From the IMG/VR virus record IMGVR_UViG_3300037042_006844, positions 186,001 through 250,000 of that record: a DNA stretch of 64,000 nucleotides. One strand, 5' to 3'. The notes under the pieces were generated by a model, which did not search any database, was not told where the DNA came from, and saw only the letters and a program-made list of their open reading frames with translations. Below, in pieces: positions 3,685 to 61,041 of the stretch. The translations under genes and the position numbers were made by a program. Within the stretch, counting starts at the first letter, position 1. Every line of letters begins with the position of its first letter.

Positions 3685-4551
3685 TTATTTTTTATAACTT
3701 TCACAAAATACCAATGCTCTATCCATCACATCACCACAACTCTCTCTGATCACCATCTGAGCAGCACCATCGTAAACGGTTTCTGTGTTGTTGATGATTA
3801 CGAATGTGCAATTTTTGTTGCGGCGATTTACCAATCCTGCTGCTGGCTGCACACTCAACGAACTACCAATTACAATGAGCAGATCAGCTTCATTGATGAC
3901 TCTATATGCAGTGTCGTATGTTTCGTCATTCAAACTTTCATCAAACAAAACGGTTGTGGGTCGCACTTTTCCACCACAATCACATTTGGCGATGTCGGAG
4001 GAATTCAACATATCGTCAAACTGCTCGTATGTGTATTTACGATAGCAACTAATACAATGTGCTTTTGATCCATTACCGTGTAGATCGAGCACGTTGACGC
4101 TTCCCGCTTTTTGATGTAAATTATCAATGTTTTGAGTCACCACCCATTTGATCTTGCCCATCTTTTCCAATTCAACCAAAGCCACATGCGCTTTGTTTGG
4201 TTGTTTGCGTGTTATCCCAGTCAATCTATGTTTATAGAAAGAGTAGAAAAGTTTGGGATTCTCCCTAAACATTTTTTTGCTAAGAATGTCTTGAGGGTTG
4301 TATCCTTGAAACTCTCCGCTTTGGTATATGCCATTATTTGATCGAAAATCTGGAATGCCAGACTCAGTAGATATACCAGCACCGGTGAAGGTCACAATGT
4401 TTGTTGCTTCCAACACCAATTCGTTGAACGTAACGGATTTCAACTTATCTGGCAGAGGCCCGGATGACTCAATGGGATCAGGACGTTGGTTTTTCAACCT
4501 CTCGGCTTTCAATTCATTGAGCGCATTCAAAATGGCATTCTGATCGATCAT
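3685..4551 (-). CDS. Sir2/CobB-family NAD-dependent deacylase
   Basis: TGAGISTESGIPDFRS, TQNIDNLH, LHG, CxxC..CxC zinc site, GSSL. Confidence 0.95.
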   Translation of the reverse strand: MIDQNAILNALNELKAERLKNQRPDPIESSGPLPDKLKSVTFNELVLEATNIVTFTGAGISTESGIPDFRSNNGIYQSGEFQGYNPQDILSKKMFRENPKLFYSFYKHRLTGITRKQPNKAHVALVELEKMGKIKWVVTQNIDNLHQKAGSVNVLDLHGNGSKAHCISCYRKYTYEQFDDMLNSSDIAKCDCGGKVRPTTVLFDESLNDETYDTAYRVINEADLLIVIGSSLSVQPAAGLVNRRNKNCTFVIINNTETVYDGAAQMVIRESCGDVMDRALVFCESYKK

Positions 4552-4919
4552 AGTTTTTCCCAGGCCTGAATTTCTGTTTGGAGAATCGCGATTTCATTTT
4601 GAAGTGAGTCAATCCGACCCTTTTTGGATCGAATTTGATGTTCAACGTTTTTTCGCCGCTGAATGGCGGACATGCGCTGTATAACCTTGACAACCTCTTC
4701 GGCGTTTTGACAACCAAGAATATCATTGGTCCAATCTTCGGCACCATCTTCTGTTTTGTTAGCCATCTCCGGCCAGAGGCTCAATATGCTGGATTCGATT
4801 TGCTTGATTATAGGAGCTATTGTTGTGGTGTTGATGTCACGAATTGCTGCTGCGCAAATTTCGATCTTTTGATAATGATCCAATGTTGTGGGTTTCGTTT
4901 TAGTGTTTGTGTTGTTCAT
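4548..4919 (-). CDS. Hypothetical protein, C-terminal coiled coil
   Basis: ORF in tightly packed minus-strand run, ATGA overlap with sir2. Confidence 0.6.
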   Translation of the reverse strand: MNNTNTKTKPTTLDHYQKIEICAAAIRDINTTTIAPIIKQIESSILSLWPEMANKTEDGAEDWTNDILGCQNAEEVVKVIQRMSAIQRRKNVEHQIRSKKGRIDSLQNEIAILQTEIQAWEKL

Positions 4920-4939
4920 ATTATGTTGTTGTTATGTTA

Positions 4940-5260
4940 TTATTTGAGGCTGTCTAGGTATTCCATCACTCTGTTGCGCAGTTCATGGTCGTGGGCGAAG
5001 CACCGGGGCCAAACCTCGGTCATGTGAAGAAAATAAGGGTTTCTTTCGTCGCCGTGTGCATGGAATTTGATTTCTTGGCTCACTTCGTTGAACGACTTTT
5101 CTGCGATATAACCCGTTTGACCAAACTGTAAAAATGGATGATGTCGAGTAATAACTGTTGCCGGAACCGTTCCGCCGAATGTAAGCTGCTCCCCTTGTGG
5201 TTTAGGACTGTATATGGCGGTTATCGTATCGAAAATTTGCTTGATAGTTTTTGATGTCAT
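4940..5260 (-). CDS. Hypothetical protein
   Basis: ORF in tightly packed minus-strand run. Confidence 0.55.
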   Translation of the reverse strand: MTSKTIKQIFDTITAIYSPKPQGEQLTFGGTVPATVITRHHPFLQFGQTGYIAEKSFNEVSQEIKFHAHGDERNPYFLHMTEVWPRCFAHDHELRNRVMEYLDSLK

Positions 5261-5269
5261 ATTCTATTT

Positions 5270-5455
5270 TTATTCGCCTCTTTTGAAACTGCCTTTCAAA
5301 CTATACAGCAGATTCTTGATTTCGTCAAGACTTCTAACACGATCTCTATATAGCATCTCTGTTTTGATACACTCTTCGTCAACTCTGCGAAGAAGATCGT
5401 TGATCTTCTGCATCGTCACCGTTGGCTTAGTTCGTTCAAACTCATCTATGTTCAT
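5270..5455 (-). CDS. Small hypothetical protein
   Basis: Preceded by TTGACA-N16-TAGCAT-N6-ATG promoter. Confidence 0.6.
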   Translation of the reverse strand: MNIDEFERTKPTVTMQKINDLLRRVDEECIKTEMLYRDRVRSLDEIKNLLYSLKGSFKRGE

Positions 5456-5461
5456 AGGAAT

Positions 5462-5489
5462 ATGCTATCATCCATTGTTGATCTGTCAA
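5462..5489 (-). promoter_or_regulatory. Sigma70-like promoter, 16-bp spacer, leaderless
   Basis: TTGACA (5489-5484) N16 TAGCAT (5467-5462), 6 nt before ATG. Confidence 0.65.
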
Positions 5490-9025: not shown

Positions 9026-9676
9026 CTAGTCCCACAAACTATCAAAATGCTCTGCAAACAACAGTAGTCCTTTTCGTTTGCGATTTTCCAAATCGTCGCA
9101 ACGTTCGATATATTGCTGCCATGCCAGCTTTTCTTCTTGGGTTTTTTCACGGTGCAGCCAACCAAGATAATCTCCATTGTTTTGATGATTTGCTGCTGGG
9201 ATATCGGGTATGGGATTGATTTTTTCGGGATCGTCGATGTATTCAAACGTCCAAATCAATTCATCCAGAATATCATTCCATTCTTTGATTACAGCATCAT
9301 CGTATGAATCGCCGTTCATCGGATGGCATTTCAAATACATAGAATTGGGGATGCCACACCTATCCATGCGGCGATAATGTTTGAGTCGGGGAAGAATGTA
9401 TTTGGTCAATGTGCTATTAAGATTCCAACACTCTTCGTTGCTCACACCATAACGCACCTTTTGATACGACGATTTTGCCCACAAACGAACAGACTCATAG
9501 CGATCTACGGCTCCCCAGCCCAAACAACGAGGAACTCGGTCGCACCACCAATCAATGTATCTGTTGATACGATAATATTCGCTGACGCAGCAACAATTGT
9601 CTGGTGTGGCATCTTTTACAACAGCTGCTTTTTTTGATGGAGAAACAAAATTTAGTTCGAGTTGATGTGCTCTCAT
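9026..9676 (-). CDS. Phage hypothetical protein
   Basis: Long ORF ending KGLLLFAEHFDSLWD; TTGACA-N16-TAGAAT-N6-ATG upstream. Confidence 0.7.
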   Translation of the reverse strand: MRAHQLELNFVSPSKKAAVVKDATPDNCCCVSEYYRINRYIDWWCDRVPRCLGWGAVDRYESVRLWAKSSYQKVRYGVSNEECWNLNSTLTKYILPRLKHYRRMDRCGIPNSMYLKCHPMNGDSYDDAVIKEWNDILDELIWTFEYIDDPEKINPIPDIPAANHQNNGDYLGWLHREKTQEEKLAWQQYIERCDDLENRKRKGLLLFAEHFDSLWD

Positions 9677-9764
9677 GTTATTATTCTAGCAGACATAAAA
9701 AAACTGTCAAGCATAACTCTTGTTTTGCTTTTTGCAAAACCCATGCTACTATTTATACAGAGCT

Positions 9765-9953
9765 ATGGAATCATTCAGTGGCAAAATAAAAGGCATACGT
9801 TTCTTGATTAAAGATGCGAAAACAATTCGAATCTGGAAACCAGATAATATGTCGTTGGAAGAGTTTAGACCCCAATGCGATTTGGTGGTCAAGTATATCA
9901 TTGACGAGGGCTTTTACACTAAAAAAACGTGCAAAGTCGAAATCGTGTTCTAG
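9765..9953 (+). CDS. Small hypothetical protein
   Basis: TATTTAT motif (9750-9756) 8 nt before ATG. Confidence 0.6.
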   Translation: MESFSGKIKGIRFLIKDAKTIRIWKPDNMSLEEFRPQCDLVVKYIIDEGFYTKKTCKVEIVF

Positions 9954-10432
9954 AGATTGTCTTTGCCCACATCTCCAAACTTAAACACTATCTTATTTTT
10001 CATAATCTCCGTCACCGTATTGTATAACTGGGGATTTTTCTTTTTGATGTCTGCTTCCAGTTCTGAAATCATCGGAATAGCTGTGTAGGCACTGGCGTTT
10101 TCCATTAGTATGCGAGTCCGAATAACATAATGGTTGTCTGTTTTGCTCACGTCTTTGGGTCTATAGATTTTTGTTAGTAGTCCAAACGAAGGATCGGGAG
10201 CTTCCATTTTACTGCTCTTTTTTGTTTTTGCGAAATAGTCTAGACCTTGACCATTTTTCAATTCGAAAATCTCCACGGTTTCGTCGTAACGACCTTCATC
10301 ACTAAACAAATACTCCATACAACGCGTTGCTGCTTCTATTAAACGATAATCAGCATCATTATCCGGGTTCGTTTCTAATGTAACTTTACATTTCCAATTC
10401 GCCCCTTCCACAATGTAGATTTCGTGTGCCAT
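9950..10432 (-). CDS. Hypothetical protein, paralog of 19775-20131
   Basis: Shared Y.V...W...V / EA.T...E / T..L..NA pattern. Confidence 0.6.
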   Translation of the reverse strand: MAHEIYIVEGANWKCKVTLETNPDNDADYRLIEAATRCMEYLFSDEGRYDETVEIFELKNGQGLDYFAKTKKSSKMEAPDPSFGLLTKIYRPKDVSKTDNHYVIRTRILMENASAYTAIPMISELEADIKKKNPQLYNTVTEIMKNKIVFKFGDVGKDNL

Positions 10433-10441
10433 ATGTTATTA

Positions 10442-11230
10442 TTAGTATAGTTCAGCGGGTTTTTGGCCTGGATAGAAAATAATATCATTAGGCTCATCGG
10501 ATGGCAATTTACCAGGTTTAGTCAAAAAGTCAAAACTATAGCTGTATTTACCTATGTGCGCCAATCGAACCGTGGTGTCACAGAAAAGGGTGATGTCGCT
10601 TTCAGTGGCACGATGACAAAATGAAAAATCTTCGCCGACATAACAATCATCGATGATCATTGGTAAAAACCAAGGATGCACGTTATATTGTCCACCCCAA
10701 ATTTTAACTGGGCGCATGTTGTATTGCAGTTTGATGTTTTCATACACACTGACATGAGTATACATGAAACCGGTTGCGCTATACTGAGCCTCATACAATG
10801 CTCCGTCTCTTCCAAATTTAATTTCGGAAAAATCTGAATGAAACTGTGTGGTGAGCGCAGGCCAACCTTTCACAGAATATGCTGCTGTGATGAACGGATA
10901 TTTACCAGCACGATTGTGGTTAATCATGCGATAAACGTCTTGTGGACAAAACGCCATATCGCTGTCGATCCAAAACAAATGTTCATATCCTTCATCGATG
11001 GCTTGCTGTGCCATCACACAACGTCCTTGATCAATAGCACTAAATCCATATTTTCTATACACTCGAATGCCGTCTGCTTCCAGCTGTCGCAACGCTTCAT
11101 CACATGCTGGTTCGACAGTCGATCCTACGGGAACCAAAATGATCGTTTTAGTTTTGTCCTCTGGACTCAACTTCCAGTATTCACCTTCGTTGGCGATTTT
11201 TTCTAGTTTTGCTGGTTTATTGAAAATCAT
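10442..11230 (-). CDS. GT-A fold glycosyltransferase-like protein
   Basis: LFWIDSDM (DxD), ATGFM, GEDFSFC, HIG motifs. Confidence 0.8.
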   Translation of the reverse strand: MIFNKPAKLEKIANEGEYWKLSPEDKTKTIILVPVGSTVEPACDEALRQLEADGIRVYRKYGFSAIDQGRCVMAQQAIDEGYEHLFWIDSDMAFCPQDVYRMINHNRAGKYPFITAAYSVKGWPALTTQFHSDFSEIKFGRDGALYEAQYSATGFMYTHVSVYENIKLQYNMRPVKIWGGQYNVHPWFLPMIIDDCYVGEDFSFCHRATESDITLFCDTTVRLAHIGKYSYSFDFLTKPGKLPSDEPNDIIFYPGQKPAELY

Positions 11231-11297
11231 ATTTATACATATCCGGCCCACGAATCTTTTGGGTTTTTTTAATTAAGCACACCCTATTTATAGCCAT

Positions 11298-12053
11298 ATG
11301 ATTGTTACAGCTTGCAATATTTTCGGTAGAGCAAAAGATTTATTGCCGCATTATTTCAAACACTATTCTGGGTTGGGAATTGACAGGTTTTACTTTGGTG
11401 TGCATGGCGAAGAAAATAGTCACATATGGGAAGAGCTTCGTCATTTTGGAAACGGTTTGGATGTGCGCATATCTAAAATGCCAACCGACAAACCGTTTGA
11501 TTGTGGTCTTGATGCCGAATTCAAAACGCAGATTGGAAATTCCATTGATGGTTGGGTTGTGCCAACCGATTTAGATGAATTTCACACCATAGATGGATAT
11601 TCAGATTTTCATCAACTCGCCAAAGATTGCGAATCGGAAAATGCCGACTATGTATTTTCGCATTTTTTAGATCGCATCGCAGAAGATGGAAGTATTCCAC
11701 CGATCATCAATCCAACGATTCCAATATGGGAGCAATTTCCCAGAACGGAGCATATAACGGCGACGGTTTTGGGGGATCGAGTAAACACAAACAAATTGTG
11801 TCTGTCAAAAGCAGGAGTGCCGTTTAGAATTGGACATCATCACGTCGGTCTTGAAAATACAGAGGCGATGTATAAACAATTTTCGAAAGTCGGTGTAACA
11901 CACCATTTCAAATGGTTTGGAGAACTAAAAACGCGCGAGCTTGACAAACTAGCTGCCAATACACCCTATAAATTTTACTATACCAACGATTGGACATTGG
12001 AACATTTGAAACTTATTAATTACGTAGAATCGCACGGAGGAAAATTGATATGA
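11298..12053 (+). CDS. GT-A glycosyltransferase (GT2_4/GT92-like), tandem paralog 1
   Basis: HYSGLGID, WVVPTDLDEF, GHH, HHFKW. Confidence 0.75.
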   Translation: MIVTACNIFGRAKDLLPHYFKHYSGLGIDRFYFGVHGEENSHIWEELRHFGNGLDVRISKMPTDKPFDCGLDAEFKTQIGNSIDGWVVPTDLDEFHTIDGYSDFHQLAKDCESENADYVFSHFLDRIAEDGSIPPIINPTIPIWEQFPRTEHITATVLGDRVNTNKLCLSKAGVPFRIGHHHVGLENTEAMYKQFSKVGVTHHFKWFGELKTRELDKLAANTPYKFYYTNDWTLEHLKLINYVESHGGKLI

Positions 12054-12808
12054 TTGCCACAATTTGTTGTATCTCGGACAGACCAGATGATTTACTTCCT
12101 CACTATTTCCAACACTATGCCAACATGGAAATCGATAGATTCTATTTTGGACTATATGGAGAAGAAAATGGAAAACTATGGGACATTGTTCGGCATTATG
12201 GTCGTGGTTTGGATTTGCAGCTATACAAAATATCAACAGCTTTGTTTTTTGATTCCCCGATGGAGTGCAATTTCAAAAACCAAATTATTAAAGATATTCA
12301 TCAACAAAACCAAAATAATTGGTATGTGCCGACCGATCTAGACGAGTTTGTGACCGTAGATGGCTATTCAACGTTTCCACAATTATCAAATGCTTGTATT
12401 TCTGAAAATGCTGATTTTGTTGCATCGGAATTATTGGATCGTATAACCACAGATGGCACTTTACCGTCCAACATTCTGTCCGATAAAACTATTTGGGACC
12501 AATTCCCCAGAACGGGGAAAATTACCACCGACATTTTGGGCAACAATGTATACATATCCAAGGTTGCATTGGCTAAATCCAGCATCCCAATCAGAAACGG
12601 GCATCACTATCCTGGATATCATGGAACGGAAGGTTCCTACAAACCATTTTCGATGCGTGGCAACACACATCATTTCAAATGGTTTGGAGCACTCTCATCC
12701 AGAGAACTACTCAAATATGACTCTGCTGTGGCAAGCAAATTTGTGTGGGCATGGGAAAATTCCAAACTGAGTGAACATATTGAGGCTCATGGCGGAAAAT
12801 TGTTCTAA
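12050..12808 (+). CDS. GT-A glycosyltransferase (GT2_4/GT92-like), tandem paralog 2
   Basis: Same motifs as upstream gene, ending HGGKL; ATGA overlap. Confidence 0.75.
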   Translation: MIATICCISDRPDDLLPHYFQHYANMEIDRFYFGLYGEENGKLWDIVRHYGRGLDLQLYKISTALFFDSPMECNFKNQIIKDIHQQNQNNWYVPTDLDEFVTVDGYSTFPQLSNACISENADFVASELLDRITTDGTLPSNILSDKTIWDQFPRTGKITTDILGNNVYISKVALAKSSIPIRNGHHYPGYHGTEGSYKPFSMRGNTHHFKWFGALSSRELLKYDSAVASKFVWAWENSKLSEHIEAHGGKLF

Positions 12809-12828
12809 ATTTTACTATTTATAACCAT

Positions 12829-13191
12829 ATGATAGTCACCAGCTTACTTACACTGCACAACCAGCTTAAAATTCATCACTGGCAAACCAAAAGCTATGCC
12901 CAGCATCAAGCATTCGGAGGAACCTATGGTGATCTCACTGATTTAATTGATGAATTTGTGGAATTATTCATGGGCAAGTATGGTCGCATCAAAGCCAAAG
13001 GTGGGTTCACCATTAAACTGGAGAACTACGAAACTCTGGCACCAACCGATCTTGCTGATAAATACATTGCCTATTTAGTTGATGAACTGCCAAAAGAACT
13101 GGATGCTGAGAAAGATACCGATCTTCTCAACATTCGAGATGAAATGCTGGGGCTACTAAACAAGTTGAAATATCTGTTGACTCTGGATTGA
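12829..13191 (+). CDS. Ferritin/Dps-like four-helix protein
   Basis: HWQT..YAQH, D...D.FVE, DLLNIRDEM, YLLTL. Confidence 0.75.
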   Translation: MIVTSLLTLHNQLKIHHWQTKSYAQHQAFGGTYGDLTDLIDEFVELFMGKYGRIKAKGGFTIKLENYETLAPTDLADKYIAYLVDELPKELDAEKDTDLLNIRDEMLGLLNKLKYLLTLD

Positions 13192-13211
13192 TCGTTTATA
13201 TTTATAATCAT

Positions 13212-13610
13212 ATGGAGCAAGACCAAAAATATTGTGTGGTGAAGTTTGTTAAGTTTATCAAAGATCAACTTGGCGTAAAACAACCATTCAAAGTGAAACT
13301 CACCGACACTCGTGACCAAGACCTTAAAACATATGCGTTTTACGACAAAACGAGTGGTGATATGAAAGTTTATACCCGGGGTCGCGGAATGGCAGACGTT
13401 CTGCGCAGTATTGCTCATGAAATGGTGCATCATTTGCAGAATCAGCGTCAACAACTCAACGTGAACCATCCAGACGTGGGTGGAAAGATTGAAGACGAAG
13501 CAAATGCAGTTGCGGGACAGTTAGTAAAGAAATTTGGGTATCAGTTTCCAAAGTTGATTATATACGCCCAACAGTTTGATGTTGACAATACACCAGACGA
13601 TGGTGTATAG
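13212..13610 (+). CDS. Putative metallopeptidase (HExxH)
   Basis: AHEMVHH...EDEANA; TATTTAT-N6-ATG start. Confidence 0.7.
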   Translation: MEQDQKYCVVKFVKFIKDQLGVKQPFKVKLTDTRDQDLKTYAFYDKTSGDMKVYTRGRGMADVLRSIAHEMVHHLQNQRQQLNVNHPDVGGKIEDEANAVAGQLVKKFGYQFPKLIIYAQQFDVDNTPDDGV

Positions 13611-13618
13611 TATCATCA

Positions 13619-13912
13619 ATGAATCCTGTTACGACCACAAAATATCAAGTCAGTGCCGAAAATTTGCAGCGTGTTTTTCAAAAACACAAACTCTGCCCAG
13701 AATACCCTATTGATGCGGAAACGTTTGTGAAAGACATTCACGAAATTACAAACGTGTGCATTATCAACACGCGTAACGTAAGTTTTGTCGAACCATTGGG
13801 TGTATCTGATGTCAATGCATTCGATCTTTTCTGTCCGAGCCACAACGACCCTTTTGCCGCCACATCAAATGAGACCAGAACTACAAGCATATCTACAGCA
13901 GAAATTTCCTAA
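13619..13912 (+). CDS. Hypothetical protein
   Basis: ORF in plus-strand run. Confidence 0.5.
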   Translation: MNPVTTTKYQVSAENLQRVFQKHKLCPEYPIDAETFVKDIHEITNVCIINTRNVSFVEPLGVSDVNAFDLFCPSHNDPFAATSNETRTTSISTAEIS

Positions 13913-14387
13913 ACTTTATACCACCACCCAAGACAAAAACGATTCATTTAGCCAGTGGGGATTTGAATGCGGAGATGGATGGTTTAGGTTATTGTTATGG
14001 TTAAGTCGATATTTGCAAAACTATCTTGATCGTCAAAACAAGATGGCGGAAAAGTATCCAGATAACTATCCCAAAATTGATCAAGTTCGGGTTGAGCAAG
14101 TCAAAGAAAAATTTGGCACACTACGTTTCTACACACAAGGTGGTAACGACCGAACCCAATCTGTAATATCGTTTGCTGAATATATTAGCGGATTTTGCTG
14201 CGAGTATACAGGTAAAACTGAAGATGTGGGTTACAACAAAAAAGGTTGGATCAAAACTGCACATAAAAGTTTTGGCAAAAAAAACGATTTCTATTATGTC
14301 GATGATGAAGAACTTCGCAGCTTGTTAAAAGGGCAGCCAACTGATGTTCAACTAGAATTTAATTTCGCAGAAAATAAGAAGGATTGA
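13869..14387 (+). CDS. Phage hypothetical protein
   Basis: GFECGDGW and QVKEKFGTLRFY motifs, typical of a common phage family. Confidence 0.75.
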   Translation: MRPELQAYLQQKFPKLYTTTQDKNDSFSQWGFECGDGWFRLLLWLSRYLQNYLDRQNKMAEKYPDNYPKIDQVRVEQVKEKFGTLRFYTQGGNDRTQSVISFAEYISGFCCEYTGKTEDVGYNKKGWIKTAHKSFGKKNDFYYVDDEELRSLLKGQPTDVQLEFNFAENKKD

Positions 14388-14404
14388 TATGTATACTATA
14401 AGTT

Positions 14405-15025
14405 ATGTATACATACAAATCCCAACGCTCTCCACATGCTAACGGTGACGAATACGACGAAGAGATTATCATAACAAAGCCTTCCAAAGGGCAAAGCCAG
14501 GTTAATGGTAACGACATCTATTTCTACAGCGATGTTTCTCTCGGAACCGTTTTTGGTCTAAACAAAACAATCAGTGATTTGGAAAAGCAAATGCTTATCA
14601 CCCAAATCAGTTTGGGACTGTCCAAACCTCCACACATCAATCTTTATATCAACAGTGATGGAGGAGAAATTTTCAGTGCTTTCACCACAGTTGACCGCAT
14701 AAAAGCATGTAAAGTGCCAATCCGAACATACGTTGAAGGTATTGCTGCCAGTGCAGCCACTTTGATCAGTGTATGTGGAACCAAACGTTATATTGGTAAA
14801 ACGGGGGTCATGTTGGTGCATCAATTGCGGAGTTGGTGCGGTGGAACCCACGAAAATTTCAAAGATGAAGCAAAAAACCTCGAAATGCTATCAGAAAAAA
14901 TTCAGAGCATTTATTTGGAGCACACCAAATTCTCCAAAGCCGATCTTGAAGAACTTCTCAAACACGACATTTATTTAAGTTCTGACGAATGTCTCAAATA
15001 CGGTTTGGTCGATGAGGTTTTGTAA
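14405..15025 (+). CDS. ClpP-like serine protease
   Basis: LYINSDGG, EGIAASAA (catalytic Ser), MLVHQ (His), YGLVDEV. Confidence 0.9.
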   Translation: MYTYKSQRSPHANGDEYDEEIIITKPSKGQSQVNGNDIYFYSDVSLGTVFGLNKTISDLEKQMLITQISLGLSKPPHINLYINSDGGEIFSAFTTVDRIKACKVPIRTYVEGIAASAATLISVCGTKRYIGKTGVMLVHQLRSWCGGTHENFKDEAKNLEMLSEKIQSIYLEHTKFSKADLEELLKHDIYLSSDECLKYGLVDEVL

Positions 15026-30389: not shown

Positions 30390-30438
30390 ATTTTTGGAGG
30401 AAGGAAACCTCTTCGGCTTTAGCCTAGGGGTAGTTGAC
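30390..30438 (+). mobile_element. 49-bp collapsed IS200/IS605 scar (left end fused to right end through one hairpin)
   Basis: TTCAT|ATTTTTGGAGGAAGGAAACCTCTTCGGCTTTAGCCTAGGGGTAGTTGAC matches 5' half of LE and 3' half of RE of 51357-52681. Confidence 0.85.
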
Positions 30439-38803: not shown

Positions 38804-39702
38804 AACGTGGCGGCTAAAATTTTGCTTGAAGCATCTAGCCATTTATCATAAAATGCAACGTTGCAATTACGGCACAACTCGTAGAACCGAGTGTATGCCG
38901 TGTTTTGTCTTGCCAGTTTGTTGTGCAACGCCATAGTTAGATAGTCATAAGTGATACCCGTCATATGCTCCCACCATATATCGGGCATACGATTCAGCAA
39001 CAATAACTGTTTGCCGTCATCAACCACATGCTCCATGATTTGCGTGGAAACGTAATCAAAATGATCATACACCACATCTTCAATGCCGTCAATTACACAA
39101 ATTGTTTTTTTGTTGGCAATCGTCATTGGAGCACTAAGCGCAAAATCTTTGGTGCCGTCAAACGGAGGAAAAAACTTCACTGCTTTATTATATGACACCC
39201 CGCAAGATTGTCGCGTCGCAAGATTTGGCATGGCTGAAAAATTTCGATCTGTTTTTTTCAAATTCGACATTCGACATCCCCAAAAACTAGGCCATAGTCG
39301 CACATCCATGATGCGCTGCCCAGCAGTATAATTTCCAAACAGCACATATTCTTGGTTTAACATGATGTCCACAATTCGGTCCCAGTCACCTATGAAATCT
39401 GGCTCGAAACTGAAAATGTAATCCGCATTGCTATTATCTATGGCGAGGTTCATTGCTATGCTTCGCCAGTCATGAATTCCGTTACTTTCATGGCGGCAGA
39501 TCGTAATGTCACATTTACCAACAAGATCGTTCGTGATAAAATCGATGTGGCTGTTTTCACTCTGAGTCAACACATGATATCGAGCGACATCGAAAATGTA
39601 ATGGATTTTATTGAATCTGGAATGATACCGATGAATAAAATCCCGTATCATGGGACTATCAAATTCGGCAGCAGCAATTATAACAACATCTACTTTATTC
39701 AT
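38800..39702 (-). CDS. GT-A-like glycosyltransferase (paralog set A)
   Basis: DWR, FEPDF, LWPSFW, YDHFDYVS, WEHMTG. Confidence 0.65.
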   Translation of the reverse strand: MNKVDVVIIAAAEFDSPMIRDFIHRYHSRFNKIHYIFDVARYHVLTQSENSHIDFITNDLVGKCDITICRHESNGIHDWRSIAMNLAIDNSNADYIFSFEPDFIGDWDRIVDIMLNQEYVLFGNYTAGQRIMDVRLWPSFWGCRMSNLKKTDRNFSAMPNLATRQSCGVSYNKAVKFFPPFDGTKDFALSAPMTIANKKTICVIDGIEDVVYDHFDYVSTQIMEHVVDDGKQLLLLNRMPDIWWEHMTGITYDYLTMALHNKLARQNTAYTRFYELCRNCNVAFYDKWLDASSKILAATL

Positions 39703-39976
39703 AATCTTTGGAGGAAGGAAACCACGACGGCTTTAGCCTCGTGGAGGAATTCCGACCAATATAATAAGTTTTTTGACATCTTCAGTATTCTGTGATATAG
39801 TTATGTTTGAAGATTGATTTCTTCAAACATCTGCCTCACGTTAGAAATAATGTCTGGACAGCAGGCCACAGTCAATTGGCCAAACGGAAACCTCACGGTT
39901 TCCAATGAATGTAAATCTTTGAACATAAGTTTGGAGTCTTTCAAGCACCTATCCCTTTAGGGTAGGTGTGGTTGAC
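39703..39976 (+). mobile_element. Non-autonomous IS200/IS605 element (LE + promoter + omega-RNA + RE, no ORF)
   Basis: TTCAT target, LE GGAGGAAGGAAA-hairpin-GAGGAATTCCGACC, RE CAAG-hairpin-GTTGAC. Confidence 0.85.
39773..39801 (+). promoter_or_regulatory. Sigma70 promoter inside the ORF-less element
   Basis: TTGACA-N17-TGaTATAGT (extended -10). Confidence 0.75.
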
Positions 39977-50396: not shown

Positions 50397-51356
50397 TCAT
50401 GGTTTAATAAAAGTGTCGTGAATGTTATGGTAATTTATTCTACCAGAAAAAACTTGATCAAACGGAACATATATATACAATAACGCGTGTCTAACATAGA
50501 CTGTATTTTGATCCATCGCGTGCAGTGCGCAATTCAAATTAAGCTTTCTTTCTGCATTGGAGTCATTTACAAAATTTTTCATGAACGCATATACTATAGG
50601 ATGGTCATTTTTGTTTAATCTATCAAACTCTTTATATAGATCATAATTGTGTTTGAGACAATTTTCAAAAAATAATTTCATCGTTGTTGGTGATCCAATG
50701 TGATAATAATCACCGCCGTAGAGATGCCCCGTGCGTGCAAGAAAAAAATTTAGGTGTATGATTCGTTTTTGTATTTGTTTTAGCGGCGAAATTATAAAAT
50801 TGTTTATGTCCCTGAATTCATGTTCGTTTATTTCGGTCCCATAGCACATCAATAAATCTGGCCGGGTGTGGATCACCAAATCAGCATCATCATTTACCAA
50901 GTCCACCATTTTTTCATACTTCACAAGCTGTCGGCTGGTCCAATAATCAAAATCAATAACTCTATCTTTTAATTCGACATTTTTAATATTGCGCAGACAG
51001 TCTTCGTATTGATCAAACTGCTCTTTTTTTAATGCATCTACATCGGCCAATACTATTTTTTTGAAATCGATGTGCCGTTTGAACTCATCGAGCCATTCGT
51101 TGAAATCATCCAGTGTATATTCTTTGTATAATTCTGGAAAGTATGTTTTGCCATACTTCAAAATGGCTGGCTTAAAATTAATCTCTGGGTATGTGTATAA
51201 AACATGTTCAAATTCTATTTTGTCGTAGTTGGTGTTTGCCTCCTTATTTATATAGTCAATGTCCATTTTATCAAAAAAATTTTTGAAATACGTGGCAGTG
51301 GCACTGCCACGCAAATGACCTTTATATATAACTTGAATCTTTAATACGTTTTTCAT
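50397..51356 (-). CDS. Putative glycosyltransferase-like protein
   Basis: GHLR and TRPDL motifs; located in glycosylation island. Confidence 0.5.
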   Translation of the reverse strand: MKNVLKIQVIYKGHLRGSATATYFKNFFDKMDIDYINKEANTNYDKIEFEHVLYTYPEINFKPAILKYGKTYFPELYKEYTLDDFNEWLDEFKRHIDFKKIVLADVDALKKEQFDQYEDCLRNIKNVELKDRVIDFDYWTSRQLVKYEKMVDLVNDDADLVIHTRPDLLMCYGTEINEHEFRDINNFIISPLKQIQKRIIHLNFFLARTGHLYGGDYYHIGSPTTMKLFFENCLKHNYDLYKEFDRLNKNDHPIVYAFMKNFVNDSNAERKLNLNCALHAMDQNTVYVRHALLYIYVPFDQVFSGRINYHNIHDTFIKP

Positions 51357-51418
51357 AATCTTGGAGGAAGGAAACCCCTTCGGCTTTAGCCAAGGGGAGG
51401 AATTCCGACCATTTAACT

Positions 51419-51447
51419 ATCTTAACACAACCACCTCAATTTGTCAA
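51419..51447 (-). promoter_or_regulatory. Outward-facing promoter in element left end
   Basis: TTGACA-N17-TGtTAAGAT pointing to gene 50397-51356. Confidence 0.65.
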
Positions 51448-51509
51448 CCACAAAAATATTTTAACTTTTTTGATGTTTTGTTATTTTCATTACTATTTAT
51501 ATCGTAGTA

Positions 51510-52670
51510 ATGATAACATACAATGTCAAATTAAAGTTTGCTAAACAAGATGATTACAATAATCTTCTTGAATCGCTCAAACTAAATCAATTGGCTTGGA
51601 ATATCATAAGTGAAGAACGATTCTCAATGACGGGTGGAAGATTGAAGCTTCTTCACGACAAGTGTTATTATAAAGTAAAAGAAGCAATTCCTACAATTCC
51701 TTCTCAATTTATCATTAAAGCAGAACAAGATGTAATTGCTACATATAAAACTATCAAGTCAAATAAACATAAACTTGATTCTCCTGCAATAAAAAAGAAT
51801 CTATCAATACAACTAGATAAACGCATATACAAGTGGATAGATAAAACTAATATCAAAATAACAACATTAGATAAACAAGCAATCGCTTCGTTTGATGTGT
51901 ATGATAAATTAAACCAATTTGACTTCAATAAGTTAAAAGATCCAAAACTATTTTTCAAAAATGGAGATTTTTACCTAAGTCTAATATTTGATACGAATGT
52001 TCCTTTTGTAGATAACAATAAAATCATAGGAATTGATGTTGGATTAAAAAGACTTGTATCAACAAGTGAAGGTATCATAATTAAAGGCAATGAATTCAAT
52101 GGACATAAACGTAAAATTCGTTGGAACAAAAGAAAACTTCAATCCAAGAAAAAATCACATTCCGCAAGAACAAAACATAAAAAACTTAAAAGGCGTGAAT
52201 CAAACTTTAGCAGAAATTATATACACAATGTTACAAAGAATGTAATTGTAAATACAAGTGCAAATACACTCGTAGTAGAAGATTTGAGCAAAATCAAAAG
52301 CAAAAATAAAGGTAGAAGATTTAATAATAGATTGAGTCAACTTCCATTTTTTGCGTTTAGATCCATATTAACATACAAGGCACAACTTTATGGGAAAAAA
52401 GTTGAAACAGTTAACCCTGCCTATACAAGCCAAATAGACCATAGAGGTTTAGCTGGTGGAAAAAGAAAGGGATGTAGATATTATGGATTGGATAAAGTAA
52501 TATTAGATTCGGATGTAAATGCCGCAATCAATATTGCAAATAGATATGTAAACAATTTAAGTTTGCATAAACACTCTGTTTCGTGCTGCAAAGCACTTGA
52601 TGGACAGGTGACTGTCAACTCACCAATCGTCGGAAGTTTCTTCCGGCAAGCCCCTATGGCTTTAGCCTAG
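51510..52670 (+). CDS. tnpB: TnpB RNA-guided endonuclease lacking canonical zinc-ribbon cysteines
   Basis: GIDVG / VVEDL / DSDVNAA RuvC triad; YKAQ, VNPAYTSQ. Confidence 0.92.
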   Translation: MITYNVKLKFAKQDDYNNLLESLKLNQLAWNIISEERFSMTGGRLKLLHDKCYYKVKEAIPTIPSQFIIKAEQDVIATYKTIKSNKHKLDSPAIKKNLSIQLDKRIYKWIDKTNIKITTLDKQAIASFDVYDKLNQFDFNKLKDPKLFFKNGDFYLSLIFDTNVPFVDNNKIIGIDVGLKRLVSTSEGIIIKGNEFNGHKRKIRWNKRKLQSKKKSHSARTKHKKLKRRESNFSRNYIHNVTKNVIVNTSANTLVVEDLSKIKSKNKGRRFNNRLSQLPFFAFRSILTYKAQLYGKKVETVNPAYTSQIDHRGLAGGKRKGCRYYGLDKVILDSDVNAAINIANRYVNNLSLHKHSVSCCKALDGQVTVNSPIVGSFFRQAPMALA

Positions 52671-52701
52671 GGGTTGTTGACAACGATTTCGCCAGAACAT
52701 T
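52560..52701 (+). ncRNA. Cis omega-RNA overlapping tnpB 3' end; guide about 52682-52701 (5' boundary approximate)
   Basis: GGTGA-CTGTCAAC-TCACC, CGGAAG-TTT-CTTCCG and RE hairpins; GTCAA/TTGAC pseudoknot. Confidence 0.7.
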
Positions 52702-57602: not shown

Positions 57603-58010
57603 TCAACTGAATTGAAAAAATTCAGATGTGTGTGTATTTATTGTGACTTTCTCGCTGATACATGGTGTGCCGTCCGATAGGAACAGATCAGTGGGAGAGA
57701 TATAAAAATTGTTGATGGCATAATCTGCATATGCCACAGTGCGCATTTGATAGTAAACCATGACGTTGCTTTCGTCATTGGTGCGAAACTCAATGTAATA
57801 CACTTTCGGATCGCTCAATCGAAACAGTTGCGAACGGGGGATGTAAAGGTTTTGTTGGTTAAGTTGAGTTTTTGTGAATTCAACGTATGGTCCACGTTGC
57901 CCAATTACGACGCGTTCGTATTTGTCCGCTATAAGGGTGCCAGATTTTGTGTATAGATTGATTTTACACCCATCTTCAAAAATATTCAATAACTCGCTAT
58001 CTTTTTTCAT
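57603..58010 (-). CDS. Hypothetical protein
   Basis: YERVVIGQRGPYVEF, YYQMRTVAYADY. Confidence 0.7.
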   Translation of the reverse strand: MKKDSELLNIFEDGCKINLYTKSGTLIADKYERVVIGQRGPYVEFTKTQLNQQNLYIPRSQLFRLSDPKVYYIEFRTNDESNVMVYYQMRTVAYADYAINNFYISPTDLFLSDGTPCISEKVTINTHTSEFFQFS

Positions 58011-58074
58011 AGTTTTGGAGGAAGGAAACCTCTTCGGCTTTAGCCAAGAGGAGGAATTCCGACCACTTCTTAAT

Positions 58075-58103
58075 ATCCTATACTAGGGTCAACCGAAAGT
58101 CAA
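58075..58103 (-). promoter_or_regulatory. Outward-facing promoter in element left end
   Basis: TTGACT-N17-TAGGAT pointing to gene 57603-58010. Confidence 0.55.
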
Positions 58104-58149
58104 TACGAAAGTGAATGCTCCCAAGGTCTAAAGACCTTGGGCGTCTGTG

Positions 58150-58290
58150 TTAAGTTGCCTTAACAAAAGAGTCCATTCCGACTCTCAAAATGTTTCGTGC
58201 TGCGTTAAGGTCTCGTCCAATGTTAAGATTACAAATAGGACATTTGTGCTGTCTCTCCGACAACTCCTTCTTAACTATGGTTCCGCACCC
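58150..58290 (-). pseudogene. tnpB: C-terminal remnant of a third TnpB, followed by its own right end (hairpin 58120-58141, TTCAC ending 58111)
   Basis: Translates as GCGTIVKKELSERQHKCPICNLNIGRDLNAARNILRVGMDSFVKAT*. Confidence 0.85.
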
Positions 58291-58323
58291 CTACGTCTTT
58301 AGCGTAGGTGTGGTTGACATATG

Positions 58324-61041
58324 TTAAAATCCGAAAAATTCATTCACTGTATTTTGATTCGCCGTAGGGAATTGCCATTTCAAAATTGAATAGAAATCTA
58401 AAAGTTTATTTTCTAATTCGGCCTCAAACATATGATGTCTATCCACATTTTTAGTAATAAAATCAAGAATTTGATCTGGATCAGTTCCATCTGCTTTGAG
58501 TGCGATACACTCAATTCCAAACTGGTTTTGTTTCAAATAGACATATTTGATTTTCTGTCCATGAAAAATTGGATGCACCATTTTGCCGATACCCGAATGT
58601 TGCAACAAATCGTTGTATGCTAATGCCGCTTTGGCTTGTGCTGTTGCTCCTTTGATAAATTTGAAACAATGGCGAGTTTTTGGATTGAAATCCGTTTTCT
58701 TGTCTTTGCTTTTGAACTTAACACTGGTATTCTTGGCAATATCAATAATACTCGCATTTGGAAGGTCGTTCAGCAATGCCAGAATTTTGACATCAATCTC
58801 TTCCTTGGGAGTTTTGCGAAGAATATCTTGCAGAAACGTTTCCATGAATTTGCGGAAATAAATTGGGAATGAGCTTTTAACTACGTCAATACCTTTGACT
58901 TCCAGTTTAGCAATATGATTTCCATTTTCATCAAAAACGAATTCTGAACGATTGTCGTTTGTGACTTCCATCGTTTTGACATCGATGCCGCCCACGTTAA
59001 TGATGAATTGTGCGTAACGCTTTTTGCTCAACCAAAAACTGGTCTTGGCAATAACTTCTTGCTTGGCATCGAAACGGTGTTTTTCAATATTGAACATCCG
59101 CACTGCCATAACATCATAAAACTTGTTCACGAACGTCTGGACTTCTGTGGTGACTTTGAGAATTGCCTCGGTCATCAACTTTTCATCGCTCTCATCGATT
59201 TCTGGCATGTTTTTCCGAATGATCGGCAGAGCACTGGCGAAACAAGAATCCGTGTCAGTATAGATCACCCAATTACCCTCGGTTTCGTTCAACGATTTTT
59301 TGAAATACTCGTTGATCGCTTTACCAGTTGTTTTGATAATATCCTGACCAGTTATTGTTACAGCACTCGCATTATCCTTGTCATAAAAACGAAAGATAGC
59401 CAGACCCAATACACCATATATGGAATTGAGAAGCACTTTCTGCACCTTTTGGCGTTGTTCATAAAATTCATACTGCTCCCAATCTTTTGCCTTCGCATAC
59501 TTCTTGGCAAGTGATCGCATTTCTTTACGCTCATCGAACCATTTTACAAGAATGCTTGGCAGCACACCCGGAACATCTTTTTGATACAAAACACCGTTGC
59601 TGGAAATACTCAACTTACTTTGGTCCAACAGTTCTTTCATTTGTGCATGTGAATAGAACGTCGAACCCATATGATATGTGGAAATTTTGTTTTGAGCAAA
59701 CATGCGAGCATTGTAACTATACAATTTCTGCTCAATATAACGATCAAGTGTAGTTTCCGTCTTGGCTTTATCACTAAGATTTTCCCAATCGTCGGTTAAC
59801 TCTTGCTTGCGTTCTGGAACGTGAATATCGTCGTATTCAACACGGTCAATTACTGCTACTTTTGTTTCAGGACTGAGGTTAAGACTAATGACGATATTCG
59901 GATACATTGATGTGAGGTCCAAATCAAACACCCATTCATAACGACCAGGAACAGGTTCTTTTACATAAGCTCCCTCAAATCCTTCTTCATCAGAATTCTT
60001 CTGGTTTTCATATTCTTCTCGCCCATCCACGGGTTTGTTTTTGGCGACTTGATTGTTCCTTCGCAGATACATCAATATTGCGCCCTCAATGAACCGTGAG
60101 CTACGATCATAGCACTCGTATGGAACGTGCCCTTTATGACAAATAGCTCGGACTAGATCGATAAACTTGAGTTTTTTATCGATTGCTACCATGATCTCTA
60201 CGTCATTCAAATTGTATTCAACATATTTTTTGATGTCCTCTTTGTAAAGAGTATCGAGACTGCCACGATAAGTAATCTTTTCCATGCCCACTTGTTTTTT
60301 ACCAATCGCGTTCAACGAATAGCTCGCCTCTTTTTTGATATTGAGCTTTTCGTAAACCTTCATGTAGTCCAAATGGGTAACGCCAGCAATTACCAATTTC
60401 TGGCTCCAATCGTTGATATAAACAATGCCGATTGGACTCAATCGTTTGGCATTCTCATACCCCACCACAGATTTGAGGCGACGATAGATGTAAGGCATGT
60501 CGAATTGATCGCTGTTCCATCCAGTTACAATCGTGGGCTGAATTTCTTCCCATTTGGATAGAAAGTGCATCAACATACTTTCTTCATTGCGAAAGCTTTT
60601 GATTTCTTTGTCGGGGCTGTCAAAGTCCGCCATCAAACCATTGCGGTCCAAAATGAATGCGGTATATTTCTTGGCAGCACTATCATATACAGCCAAAGCT
60701 GTGATTGTTTTGTCAGCCTCTCCGTCCGCAGCGATTCCACCTTCGATGTCGATTTCGATGTCCAAAAATAATACGCGATGACCTTCAGAAAGTTCGTCGC
60801 TATCTTCATAAGCATCAATCAGAATACGAGTATCAATTGGAACGTCACTTTCAAACAAAGAAGGATCGCGAGGATTGAAACTGAACACTTTCTCCAGATC
60901 GTCCCCGAACATACTTTTGTATTTACCGCCCGAACGCTTTCTATAAGCGTATGGGCGAAAAACAAAATTGGTATATCCAAGTTTGTCGTCCCACAGATGG
61001 CAGGTGTTTGTTTTACGCTCGAAGTAGATGTTTTGAAACAT
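58324..61041 (-). CDS. Family B DNA polymerase
   Basis: Exo FLDIE, GWN...FD, YNLND; pol DLTSMYP, KVLLNSIYG, YTDTDS, KKRY. Confidence 0.97.
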   Translation of the reverse strand: MFQNIYFERKTNTCHLWDDKLGYTNFVFRPYAYRKRSGGKYKSMFGDDLEKVFSFNPRDPSLFESDVPIDTRILIDAYEDSDELSEGHRVLFLDIEIDIEGGIAADGEADKTITALAVYDSAAKKYTAFILDRNGLMADFDSPDKEIKSFRNEESMLMHFLSKWEEIQPTIVTGWNSDQFDMPYIYRRLKSVVGYENAKRLSPIGIVYINDWSQKLVIAGVTHLDYMKVYEKLNIKKEASYSLNAIGKKQVGMEKITYRGSLDTLYKEDIKKYVEYNLNDVEIMVAIDKKLKFIDLVRAICHKGHVPYECYDRSSRFIEGAILMYLRRNNQVAKNKPVDGREEYENQKNSDEEGFEGAYVKEPVPGRYEWVFDLDLTSMYPNIVISLNLSPETKVAVIDRVEYDDIHVPERKQELTDDWENLSDKAKTETTLDRYIEQKLYSYNARMFAQNKISTYHMGSTFYSHAQMKELLDQSKLSISSNGVLYQKDVPGVLPSILVKWFDERKEMRSLAKKYAKAKDWEQYEFYEQRQKVQKVLLNSIYGVLGLAIFRFYDKDNASAVTITGQDIIKTTGKAINEYFKKSLNETEGNWVIYTDTDSCFASALPIIRKNMPEIDESDEKLMTEAILKVTTEVQTFVNKFYDVMAVRMFNIEKHRFDAKQEVIAKTSFWLSKKRYAQFIINVGGIDVKTMEVTNDNRSEFVFDENGNHIAKLEVKGIDVVKSSFPIYFRKFMETFLQDILRKTPKEEIDVKILALLNDLPNASIIDIAKNTSVKFKSKDKKTDFNPKTRHCFKFIKGATAQAKAALAYNDLLQHSGIGKMVHPIFHGQKIKYVYLKQNQFGIECIALKADGTDPDQILDFITKNVDRHHMFEAELENKLLDFYSILKWQFPTANQNTVNEFFGF

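What the first reader, a model, noticed from the sequence alone, without database searches (positions are those of the whole stretch)
58011..58318. Nested element: inverted tnpB tail and second right end inside a start-codon element
Seen: missed by the ORF track, 58290-58150 (minus) encodes the zinc ribbon and RuvC-III of a third TnpB, followed by GACG-CCCAAGGTC-TTTA-GACCTTGGG-AGCATTCAC; GACG/TCAC obeys the IS608 pairing rule. What is retained is about the region that normally encodes the omega-RNA scaffold, oriented with the DNA polymerase operon. Its guide would be TTTCGTATTGACTTTCGGTT, which overlaps the -35 box of the outer element's outward promoter. Inference: either an IS-in-IS relic or a second orphan guide aimed at another element family (transposon-versus-transposon conflict).
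Basis: partly seen in the sequence, partly recalled or inferred. Interest (0 to 1): 0.65.

Follow-up and report, generated by a model that had tools for sequence, protein, structure and literature searches.

The report
Nested transposon remnant keeping guide-RNA module
Between the DNA polymerase gene and the next gene of a 304-kb phage sits a small gene-less transposon that holds, upside down, the last ~180 bases of a second related transposon, the part that normally makes its guide RNA; it is most likely a recent relic, not a working weapon.

Summary
Window 58011-58318 is a 308-bp insertion. Six related phages have only 6 bp between the polB stop and the next gene's ATG.

The outer shell is a gene-less copy of the window's "A" family of TnpB elements. 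It has a left end after TTCAT and a right-end hairpin ending TTGAC.

Inside it, inverted, 58111-58287 is the last 45-46 codons plus the complete right end of a different "B" family. That family is present in 6 metagenome contigs and about 20 viral contigs. All of them end in GGGAGCATTCAC followed by unrelated flanks. Full-length B proteins are 370 aa.

The right-end junction is precise, so this was a real insertion. The other junction is an illegitimate deletion at a 3-6-nt microhomology. That deletion also removed the outer right end's invariant CAAG.

The retained piece keeps all three conserved scaffold hairpins; two show compensatory changes in relatives.

An intact B paralog, 72% identical to the tail, lies elsewhere in the same phage contig. 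Trans use is therefore not excluded. However, the 20-nt "guide" has no target beyond itself.

A and B are sister families with homologous ends, not unrelated rivals.

Verdict: an IS-in-IS relic that preserves an orphan guide-RNA module. This is a known kind of object and of modest interest.

The parts
58006..58010 (+). Target motif TTCAT next to the outer element's left end. CAT is the reverse complement of the ATG of the 135-aa gene at 57603-58010 (-).
   Evidence: All 4 A-family left ends in the window and all 28 IMG/VR loci follow TTCAT. The empty site in relatives reads TTTTAA-attgtt-ATGAAAAA.
58011..58110 (+). Left end of the outer, gene-less A-family element. It includes the subterminal hairpin at 58029-58051.
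   Evidence: 92% identical over 66 nt to the left end of the full A element at 51349-51414. Its interior aligns with A left ends in other phages.
58075..58103 (-). Promoter-like site TTGACT-17-TAGGAT pointing out of the left end towards the 135-aa gene.
   Evidence: Consensus scan. The TGTCAA/TTGACA hexamer recurs at about the same place in most A left ends that have an interior. This is a consensus match only; function was not tested.
58091..58110 (-). Flank directly 3' of the inner right end. This is the position that would be the 20-nt guide of an omega-RNA.
   Evidence: The boundary is fixed by 6 independent copies whose sequence diverges immediately after TCAC. The only match in the window is itself.
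58111..58149 (-). Inner B-family right end: cleavage motif TCAC 58114-58111, spacer, hairpin 58141-58120, and GACG 58145-58142.
   Evidence: Identical in L012-L017. The hairpin stems covary in L018-L026 and L212-L228, while AGCATTCAC is invariant.
58150..58290 (-). Last 46 codons plus the stop of a B-family tnpB: the second half of the zinc ribbon and RuvC-III. There is no start codon, and TAG lies just upstream. B-derived DNA is certain up to 58287.
   Evidence: 85% aa identity to the 370-aa L013 protein over the tail; 87%.
58149..58186 (-). Two internal scaffold hairpins: 58186-58167 (near-invariant GAGTC/GACTC stem) and 58164-58149 (GTTAAG/CTTAAC stem, which spans the stop codon).
   Evidence: RNAalifold on 15 and 18 family members. 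The second hairpin has 4-9 sequences per pair with both sides changed and the pair kept. Both also form in the single-sequence fold.
58285..58289 (-). GGTGC, predicted to pair with GCATT at 58118-58114 and so close the whole scaffold. It also lies exactly at the truncation point.
   Evidence: Only one-sided (wobble) changes are seen, so this helix is a hypothesis.
58285..58318 (+). Right-end hairpin of the outer A-family element, ending TTGAC. It is joined to the B tail within GCA(C/T)CC at 58285-58290.
   Evidence: Direct-repeat family D2. Twelve A right ends in other viral loci and two full ones in the window read CAAG-hairpin-T(G/T)GTTGAC. Here CAAG is replaced by TCCG from the B tail.
58319..58326 (-). 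5-nt spacer and the TAA stop of the family-B DNA polymerase gene (58324-61041).

Best explanation
Window 58111-58287 is the 3'-terminal ~177 nt of a B-family IS200/IS605-type, TnpB-only transposon: the last 45-46 codons plus a complete right end. It lies inverted inside a gene-less A-family element. That outer element had inserted after TTCAT at the start codon of the gene downstream of polB.

Proposed steps:
1. Shown: the whole 308 bp is an insertion relative to related phages.
2. Shown from the exact right-end boundary, with the mechanism inferred: the B element entered the interior of the A left end by normal single-strand transposition, or by guide-RNA-directed homing.
3. Inferred: an illegitimate deletion across a 3-6-nt microhomology followed. 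It removed B's left end, about 88% of tnpB, the rest of A's interior, and the invariant CAAG 5' of A's right-end hairpin. By the IS608 rule this should leave the composite unable to be cut at that end.

What survives is the segment that in intact family members encodes the omega-RNA scaffold, with all three conserved hairpins intact. It cannot make protein. It is probably transcribed passively as part of the polB operon read-through.

It is most likely a young, immobile relic. Any guide activity would need a B-type TnpB supplied in trans.
For: - Insertion: six relatives with PolB 68-71% identical have a 6-nt spacer where this phage has 313 bp.
- Outer shell is A family: the left end is 92% identical to the full element's. 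The right-end hairpin plus TGGTTGAC is as in the 39943-39976 copy.
- Inner piece is B family: Pfam hit E 2.3e-7. The RE is exact in 6 metagenome contigs with divergent flanks. Full-length 370-aa proteins are in L013 and L017. Nucleotide identity is 90-93% to the closest copies.
- Illegitimate second junction: B consensus GGATGC meets A consensus GCACC within 58285-58290, and CAAG is lost.
- Scaffold integrity.
- Recent origin: the tail matches consensus at all 24 invariant columns of the family alignment and differs from full-length L021 at only 2 of 46 residues. Its nucleotide differences from relatives look mostly synonymous by eye.
- No target for the guide.
- No second copy of the composite in IMG/VR.
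- Role of GR in cleavage-site recognition: PMC3201880.
Against: - Recency and selection on the RNA cannot be told apart. The scaffold carries no stem-breaking change.
- Two independent LE-less tail-only copies (the window and L012) begin within about 12 nt of each other, at the 5' strand of the predicted closing helix. That could mean the whole guide-RNA module is being preserved.
- An intact B-family TnpB with the same invariant scaffold elements lies in the same phage contig (L212).
- The pre-insertion A sequence could not be recovered, so B's target motif at the insertion point is unverified.
- Transcription is inferred only from strand and the absence of a predicted terminator.
Confidence: 0.72

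Rival explanations
1. Working orphan omega-RNA. The retained scaffold is cut out of the polB-operon transcript and loaded in trans by the intact B-family TnpB encoded elsewhere in the phage (L212:4334-5488). The resulting nuclease would be aimed at TAM + TTTCGTATTGACTTTCGGTT. That sequence is an A-family left end of this subtype lacking the B insertion, for example in a co-infecting relative.
For: - An intact paralog with RuvC D/E/D motifs is in the same contig, 72% aa identical to the tail.
- The near-invariant scaffold segments (the GAGTC/GACTC hairpin and AGCATTCAC) are identical between the two. Differences sit in stems and are compensatory.
- The retained length of 180 nt lies within the 79-466 nt known for processed omega-RNAs, and TnpB can process them from longer mRNA (PMC10278001).
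- Gene-less elements carrying omega-RNAs for use in trans have already been proposed (PMC10055086).
- Two tail-only copies start at nearly the same point.
Against: - There is no target in the window, in the 304-kb contig (exact 16-mer), or above my rough chance estimate in IMG/VR.
- The left-end subtype that would be the target exists nowhere else in IMG/VR.
- The guide is simply whatever flanked the insertion, as for any copy.
- Gene-less B minis keep only ~85-95 nt, so 180 nt is not a required unit.
- The locus is absent from all six relatives, so there is no sign of conservation.
Confidence: 0.15
2. The composite was assembled elsewhere. The B insertion and the deletion happened in another genome, and the finished A-shell/B-core chimera then transposed to the polB site as a unit.
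For: - The outer left end and right-end hairpin are both present, and the element sits at a canonical TTCAT site.
- This left-end interior differs from the other six A copies in the contig, which could mean a foreign origin.
Against: - The CAAG guide tetranucleotide of the outer right end is gone. By the IS608 rule this should block cleavage (PMC3201880), so the deletion more likely followed arrival.
- No second copy of the chimera or of its left-end subtype exists in IMG/VR.
Confidence: 0.1
3. Co-opted RNA structure. The stacked hairpins between polB and the next gene serve the phage as a processing or stability element or an attenuator, and the transposon origin is incidental.
For: - The 202-nt minus-strand RNA folds well: -62.5 kcal/mol, z -3.4.
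- It lies inside an essential replication operon.
Against: - No terminator-like site is predicted on the coding strand.
- Relatives manage with a 6-nt spacer.
- The structure is fully explained by family-wide omega-RNA conservation.
Confidence: 0.03

Closest known systems
IS200/IS605-family TnpB-only elements and their omega-RNAs (e.g. ISDra2, 'Typical' TnpB clade with RuvC-III DRDxN)
   Same: - TnpB C-terminus with zinc ribbon and an RDxN motif.
- Scaffold overlapping the 3' end of tnpB.
- Subterminal hairpin 9 nt from the boundary.
- Guide taken from the flank.
- 5-nt target motif next to the left end in intact family members.
   Different: - Only the last 46 codons and the right end remain.
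- There is no left end and no adjacent nuclease gene.
- The B family (>=77% aa) was found only in viral and metagenome contigs. The best match in 185,579 species genomes is 44-46%.
PATE-like gene-less IS200/IS605 derivatives carrying omega-RNAs used in trans (Meers et al., PMC10055086)
   Same: - A protein-less piece that keeps the guide-RNA region.
- A related TnpB elsewhere in the genome.
- The outer A shell and the 39703-39976 copy are PATE-like.
   Different: - The inner piece has no left end of its own, so it is a truncation rather than a mobile mini-element.
- The outer shell has lost the CAAG 5' of its right-end hairpin.
IS608 end recognition by TnpA (guide tetranucleotide 5' of each hairpin pairs with the cleavage site; PMC3201880)
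   Same: - Same geometry: four bases 5' of the hairpin foot, and the cleavage motif ending 9 nt 3' of it (IS608: 10 nt).
- Position 4 covaries across relatives: GAAT/TCAA versus GA(A/C/T)G/TCAC.
   Different: - No tnpA gene was seen, but the window was not searched for one.
- The other three positions do not vary, so the rule is only partly testable.
- The left-end guide/target relation did not resolve cleanly.
TldR, nuclease-dead TnpB-derived repressors whose guides target promoters (PMC10705468)
   Same: The would-be guide overlaps a -35-like hexamer.
   Different: - The overlap is with the guide's own DNA copy. That copy is preceded by TTCAC (the element's own end), not by a target motif.
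- No dead TnpB is involved: both B proteins keep catalytic motifs.
- The resemblance is superficial.

Membership tests
IS200/IS605 TnpB element (right end / omega-RNA module) | Homology to the TnpB C-terminus (zinc ribbon + RuvC-III) | tested here: met
   PF07282 E 2.3e-7; 85-87% aa to 370-aa family members.
IS200/IS605 TnpB element (right end / omega-RNA module) | Subterminal hairpin within ~10 nt of a sharply defined 3' boundary | tested here: met
   Hairpin 58141-58120 and boundary at 58111. Flanks diverge immediately after TCAC in 6 exact copies and about 20 relatives.
IS200/IS605 TnpB element (right end / omega-RNA module) | Conserved RNA secondary structure supported by compensatory changes | tested here: met
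   Two of three hairpins have 4-9 sequences per pair with both sides changed and the pair kept. The third is nearly invariant. The long-range closing helix is unproven.
IS200/IS605 TnpB element (complete, autonomous or TnpA-mobilisable) | Own left end with hairpin, preceded by the target motif | tested here: not met
   No B-type left end (…CAGAAAACCC-hairpin-ATGAATG) lies near the tail. The tail abuts the outer A right-end hairpin instead.
IS200/IS605 TnpB element (complete, autonomous or TnpA-mobilisable) | Full-length tnpB open reading frame | tested here: not met
   46 of ~370 codons, no start, TAG immediately upstream.
Functional omega-RNA | Discrete transcript bound by a cognate TnpB | not testable with these tools
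   Needs RNA-seq or RIP. An intact paralog exists in the same contig (L212).
Functional omega-RNA | Guide with a TAM-flanked target | tested here: not met
   No second match in the window at <=3 mismatches. In IMG/VR the 16-mer gives 60 loci, about my rough chance estimate, and no match extends further. It occurs once in the phage's own contig. The whole contig could not be scanned with mismatches.
PATE / gene-less A-family element (outer shell) | A-type left end after TTCAT and A-type right-end hairpin ending TTGAC | tested here: met
PATE / gene-less A-family element (outer shell) | Invariant CAAG guide tetranucleotide 5' of the right-end hairpin | tested here: not met
   TCCG is present instead of CAAG. 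CAAG is present in all 14 other full A right ends examined (12 in other loci, 2 in the window).

The most novel reading that the evidence does not exclude
The phage keeps a protein-less B-type guide-RNA module inside its replication operon. The module is loaded in trans by the intact B-family TnpB encoded elsewhere in the genome (L212). It directs cleavage, or binding at the -35 region, of A-family left ends of this subtype. That would be one phage-borne TnpB family policing or homing into a sister family in co-infecting phages.
Probability: 0.1. Interest if true: 0.6.

Novelty: new member of a known kind. Interest (0 to 1): 0.33.

Why it matters
On its own this is a decayed nested transposon, which is an ordinary object. 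It matters for three smaller reasons.

- It gives a clean worked example of how TnpB elements decay down to their guide-RNA module, with one precise junction and one microhomology junction.
- It defines, by comparison, the ends, target motifs and scaffold of a TnpB family that so far appears only in large phages.
- With an intact paralog in the same genome, it offers a cheap test of whether orphan omega-RNAs are used in trans.

The more interesting biology is the surrounding system. Two sister TnpB families populate jumbo-phage genomes, and the A family inserts at start codons and carries an outward promoter-like site.

Tried and rejected
- Near-identical DNA search of the locus against named phages found no match.
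- Rfam, at gathering thresholds and at permissive thresholds on 57900-58450, found nothing relevant.
- The exact 22-nt hairpin in 185,579 species genomes gave zero matches. A profile scan of the same collection found only 44-46% relatives, so no host-borne cognate was identified.
- The first protein-pattern scan of IMG/VR suggested there was no B-type TnpB in the phage's own contig. This was wrong. A later scan with the near-invariant 20-nt scaffold string found the L212 paralog, whose zinc-finger motifs differ from the patterns used.
- I tried to recover the pre-insertion A left end, to read B's target motif at the insertion point. The 24-mer is unique to this locus. Alignment to other A left ends gives only ATATT/AATAT at that position, against the expected TTTAT. 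This is inconclusive.
- An exact-protein look-up of the downstream gene found no other contig, so no close relative is available to date the events.
- I considered reading the 58318-58285 hairpin as B's own left end, which would make a B mini-element on the minus strand. I rejected this: the hairpin plus TGGTTGAC matches A right ends in the plus orientation and does not resemble B left ends.
- L012's flanking genes are unrelated to this phage, so it is an independent tail-only copy.
- I did not run the count of structure pairs, because it needs a long typed structure string. The pair counts reported come from fold_alignment.

Full report
**Context**

The window is contig positions ~186,001-250,000 of IMGVR_UViG_3300037042_006844, a 303,564-bp phage contig. 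Its family-B DNA polymerase is closest, among named phages, to that of Microcystis phage Mel-JY01 at 39.5% aa identity.

The finding lies between the stop of polB (58324-61041, minus) and the ATG of a 135-aa gene (57603-58010, minus). Sliding-clamp-like and clamp-loader-like genes follow on the same strand.

**The region is an insertion**

Six IMG/VR phages have PolB 68-71% identical and the same gene order. In all of them the polB stop and the next ATG are 6 nt apart (TTTTAA-attgtt-ATGAAAAA). Here they are 313 nt apart.

**Outer shell (A family)**

The window holds a full TnpB element at about 51357-52681. Its tnpB is 51510-52670 and matches Pfam OrfB_IS605 and the Cas12f1-like TNB domain.

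- Left end: the left end of that element recurs at 39696, 30382 and 58003. Each time it abuts TTCAT, the reverse complement of an ATGAA start codon. The same left-end pattern occurs in 28 IMG/VR loci, always after TTCAT, and seven times in this contig.
- Right end: A right ends read CAAG, hairpin, T(G/T)GTTGAC in all 14 other full right ends examined, 12 in other loci and 2 in the window.
- This copy: 58011-58110 is an A left end, 92% identical over the first 66 nt to the full element's. 58285-58318 is an A right-end hairpin ending TGGTTGAC.
- Promoter-like site: the left-end interior carries a minus-strand TTGACT-17-TAGGAT match. Its -35-like hexamer recurs at about the same place in most A left ends that have an interior. 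This is a consensus match, not evidence of function.

**Inner piece (B family)**

- Tail: minus-strand 58290-58153 is an open 46-codon stretch ending in TAA. It has a TAG just upstream and no start codon. It matches the last 27 positions of PF07282 at E 2.3e-7.
- No source in the window: neither intact TnpB in the window is the source. The A protein is 27% identical to full-length B, and the 1733-2959 protein is 31% identical over 130 aa.
- Copies elsewhere: the 22-nt hairpin that follows the tail is unique in IMG/VR to this locus and absent from 185,579 species genomes. It occurs exactly in six metagenome contigs. In every one it is preceded by the same tail sequence and followed by AGCATTCAC and then unrelated DNA. 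This fixes the right-end boundary at 58111 and the would-be guide at 58110-58091.
- What those copies are: L013 and L017 carry full 370-aa TnpBs with HTH, OrfB_IS605 and TNB domains. L014-L016 are gene-less minis with their own left ends. L012 is a second tail-only copy in an unrelated context.
- Viral relatives: IMG/VR holds further full-length relatives at 77-83% aa.

**Scaffold conservation**

Across 15 to 18 family members three hairpins are conserved upstream of an invariant AGCATTCAC.

| Hairpin | Window coordinates | Behaviour in relatives |
|---|---|---|
| GAGTC/GACTC | 58186-58167 | nearly invariant |
| second hairpin | 58164-58149 | 4-9 sequences per pair with both sides changed and the pair kept |
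| terminal hairpin | 58141-58120 | 6-9 such sequences in its variable pairs |

The window copy is intact in all three, and they also form in its own minimum-energy fold.

RNAalifold also pairs GGTGC at 58289-58285 with GCATT at 58118-58114, which would close the scaffold. Only wobble changes support that helix, so I treat it as a hypothesis.

Published omega-RNA scaffolds span 79-466 nt and have a 3' hairpin within 10 nt of the guide (PMC10278001). The retained ~180 nt fit that range. Gene-less B minis keep only ~85-95 nt, so 180 nt is not a required unit.

**The two junctions differ in kind**

- Right-end junction: the TCAC|TTTCG junction is exact, as expected of transposition into the A left-end interior, 7 nt upstream of the -35-like hexamer.
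- Second junction: it lies inside the zinc-finger codons. B consensus GGATGC meets A consensus GCACC within 58285-58290, a 3-6-nt microhomology.
- What that event removed: B's left end, about 88% of tnpB, the rest of A's interior, and A's CAAG, which now reads TCCG.
- Likely consequence: in IS608 the four bases 5' of each hairpin guide cleavage, and deleting the right one abolishes robust complex formation (PMC3201880). The composite is therefore probably immobile. This is an inference.
- Consistent with that: no second copy of the chimera or of its left-end subtype exists in IMG/VR.

**A and B are sister families**

B left ends have the layout …TTTAT or TTACAT | ~16-19 nt | hairpin | ATGAATG… They align base for base with A left ends, …TTCAT | aatcttggaggaaggaaa | hairpin | aggaattcc… Some hairpins are identical between the two families. 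The right-end architecture is also shared.

**Is there a cognate nuclease?**

A first protein-pattern scan found only the tail in the phage's own contig. A scan with the near-invariant 20-nt scaffold string then found a second B-type scaffold in the same contig, outside the window (L212).

- It belongs to an intact element with a 384-aa ORF at L212:4334-5488.
- Its left end follows TTTACAT, and its right end finishes GGGGAGCATTCAC at L212:4322.
- It is 72% aa and 73% nt identical to the tail, against 90-93% nt for the tail's closest relatives elsewhere. It is a paralog, not the parent.
- It shares every near-invariant scaffold element, so trans use cannot be excluded.

**Targets**

- The 20-mer has no other match in the window at up to 3 mismatches.
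- Its first 16 nt occur in 60 IMG/VR loci, against my rough estimate of about 40 expected by chance. They occur once in the phage's own contig, and no match extends beyond 16 nt.
- Two related contigs, L072 and L099, have TTCAT directly upstream of the 16-mer. My rough estimate is that about 0.2 such cases would arise by chance, so I regard this as coincidence.

**Age**

The tail matches the family consensus at all 24 invariant columns of the alignment and differs from full-length L021 at only 2 of 46 residues. Its nucleotide differences from relatives look mostly synonymous by eye. The truncation is therefore recent relative to the family's divergence. This also means the intact stems cannot separate selection from youth.

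**Verdict**

- The IS-in-IS relic reading is well supported.
- A working orphan guide is possible, since a paralogous nuclease is present and the scaffold is intact, but it lacks any target or conservation evidence.
- I rate it a new member of a known kind, of modest interest.

Noticed in passing
L212:4322-5575 (same phage contig, outside the window): An intact B-family TnpB element. The ORF is 384 aa at 4334-5488 on the minus strand of the locus and keeps GIDVG, VEDI and RDLNAARNI. Its left end follows TTTACAT. Its right end overlaps the last codons of a convergent 336-aa gene.
   Followed up: partly
window 51357-52681, 39703-39976, 30390-30438, 58011-58318; L105-L131: The A-family TnpB elements always sit directly after TTCAT, the reverse complement of an ATGAA start codon. 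Most left ends with an interior carry a TTGACA-like hexamer on the strand pointing out of the left end. The family occurs in many large viral contigs, with at least 7 copies in this one.
   Followed up: partly
window 30390-30438; L105, L110, L113, L115, L118: Solo hairpins that look like left-end/right-end fusions: the left arm and 5' context of the left end joined to the right arm plus GTTGAC of the right end. This suggests recombination or excision scars between the two end hairpins.
   Followed up: no
window 39703-39976: A gene-less A-family mini-element. It keeps the left end and ~150 nt of right-end-proximal sequence with hairpins resembling the 3' end of the full element. It is a PATE-like candidate orphan guide-RNA locus of the A family.
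   Followed up: no
window 51510-52670: The A-family TnpB lacks the zinc-ribbon cysteine pairs (it reads …GKRKGCRYYGLDKVILDSDVNAAINI…) but keeps a RuvC-III-like aspartate.
   Followed up: no
L003 and L004, ~9100-14550: Two of the six related phages have about 5.4 kb extra between the 135-aa gene homolog and the clamp-like gene, compared with the other four.
   Followed up: no
L072 and L099 (IMGVR_UViG_3300028413_000005, IMGVR_UViG_3300028373_000003): TTCAT is followed by an exact 16-nt match to the would-be guide. By my rough estimate about 0.2 such cases would arise by chance among the ~25 distinct 16-mer hits. The surrounding genes were not examined.
   Followed up: no
L012:56-250 (metagenome contig OCZT010203521.1): An independent tail-only B copy, 93% nt identical to the window's. 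It starts ~12 nt further upstream, abuts the stop of an unrelated gene, and is followed by AGGAGG-ATATG of the next gene. It has the same orientation as its neighbours, as in the window.
   Followed up: partly
L013:130-170: A full-length B-family element whose left-end hairpin (CCACGATGGC-TTTA-GCCTCGTGG) is nearly identical to the A-family left-end hairpin at window 39722-39745. This suggests both families are served by the same or very similar transposase.
   Followed up: no
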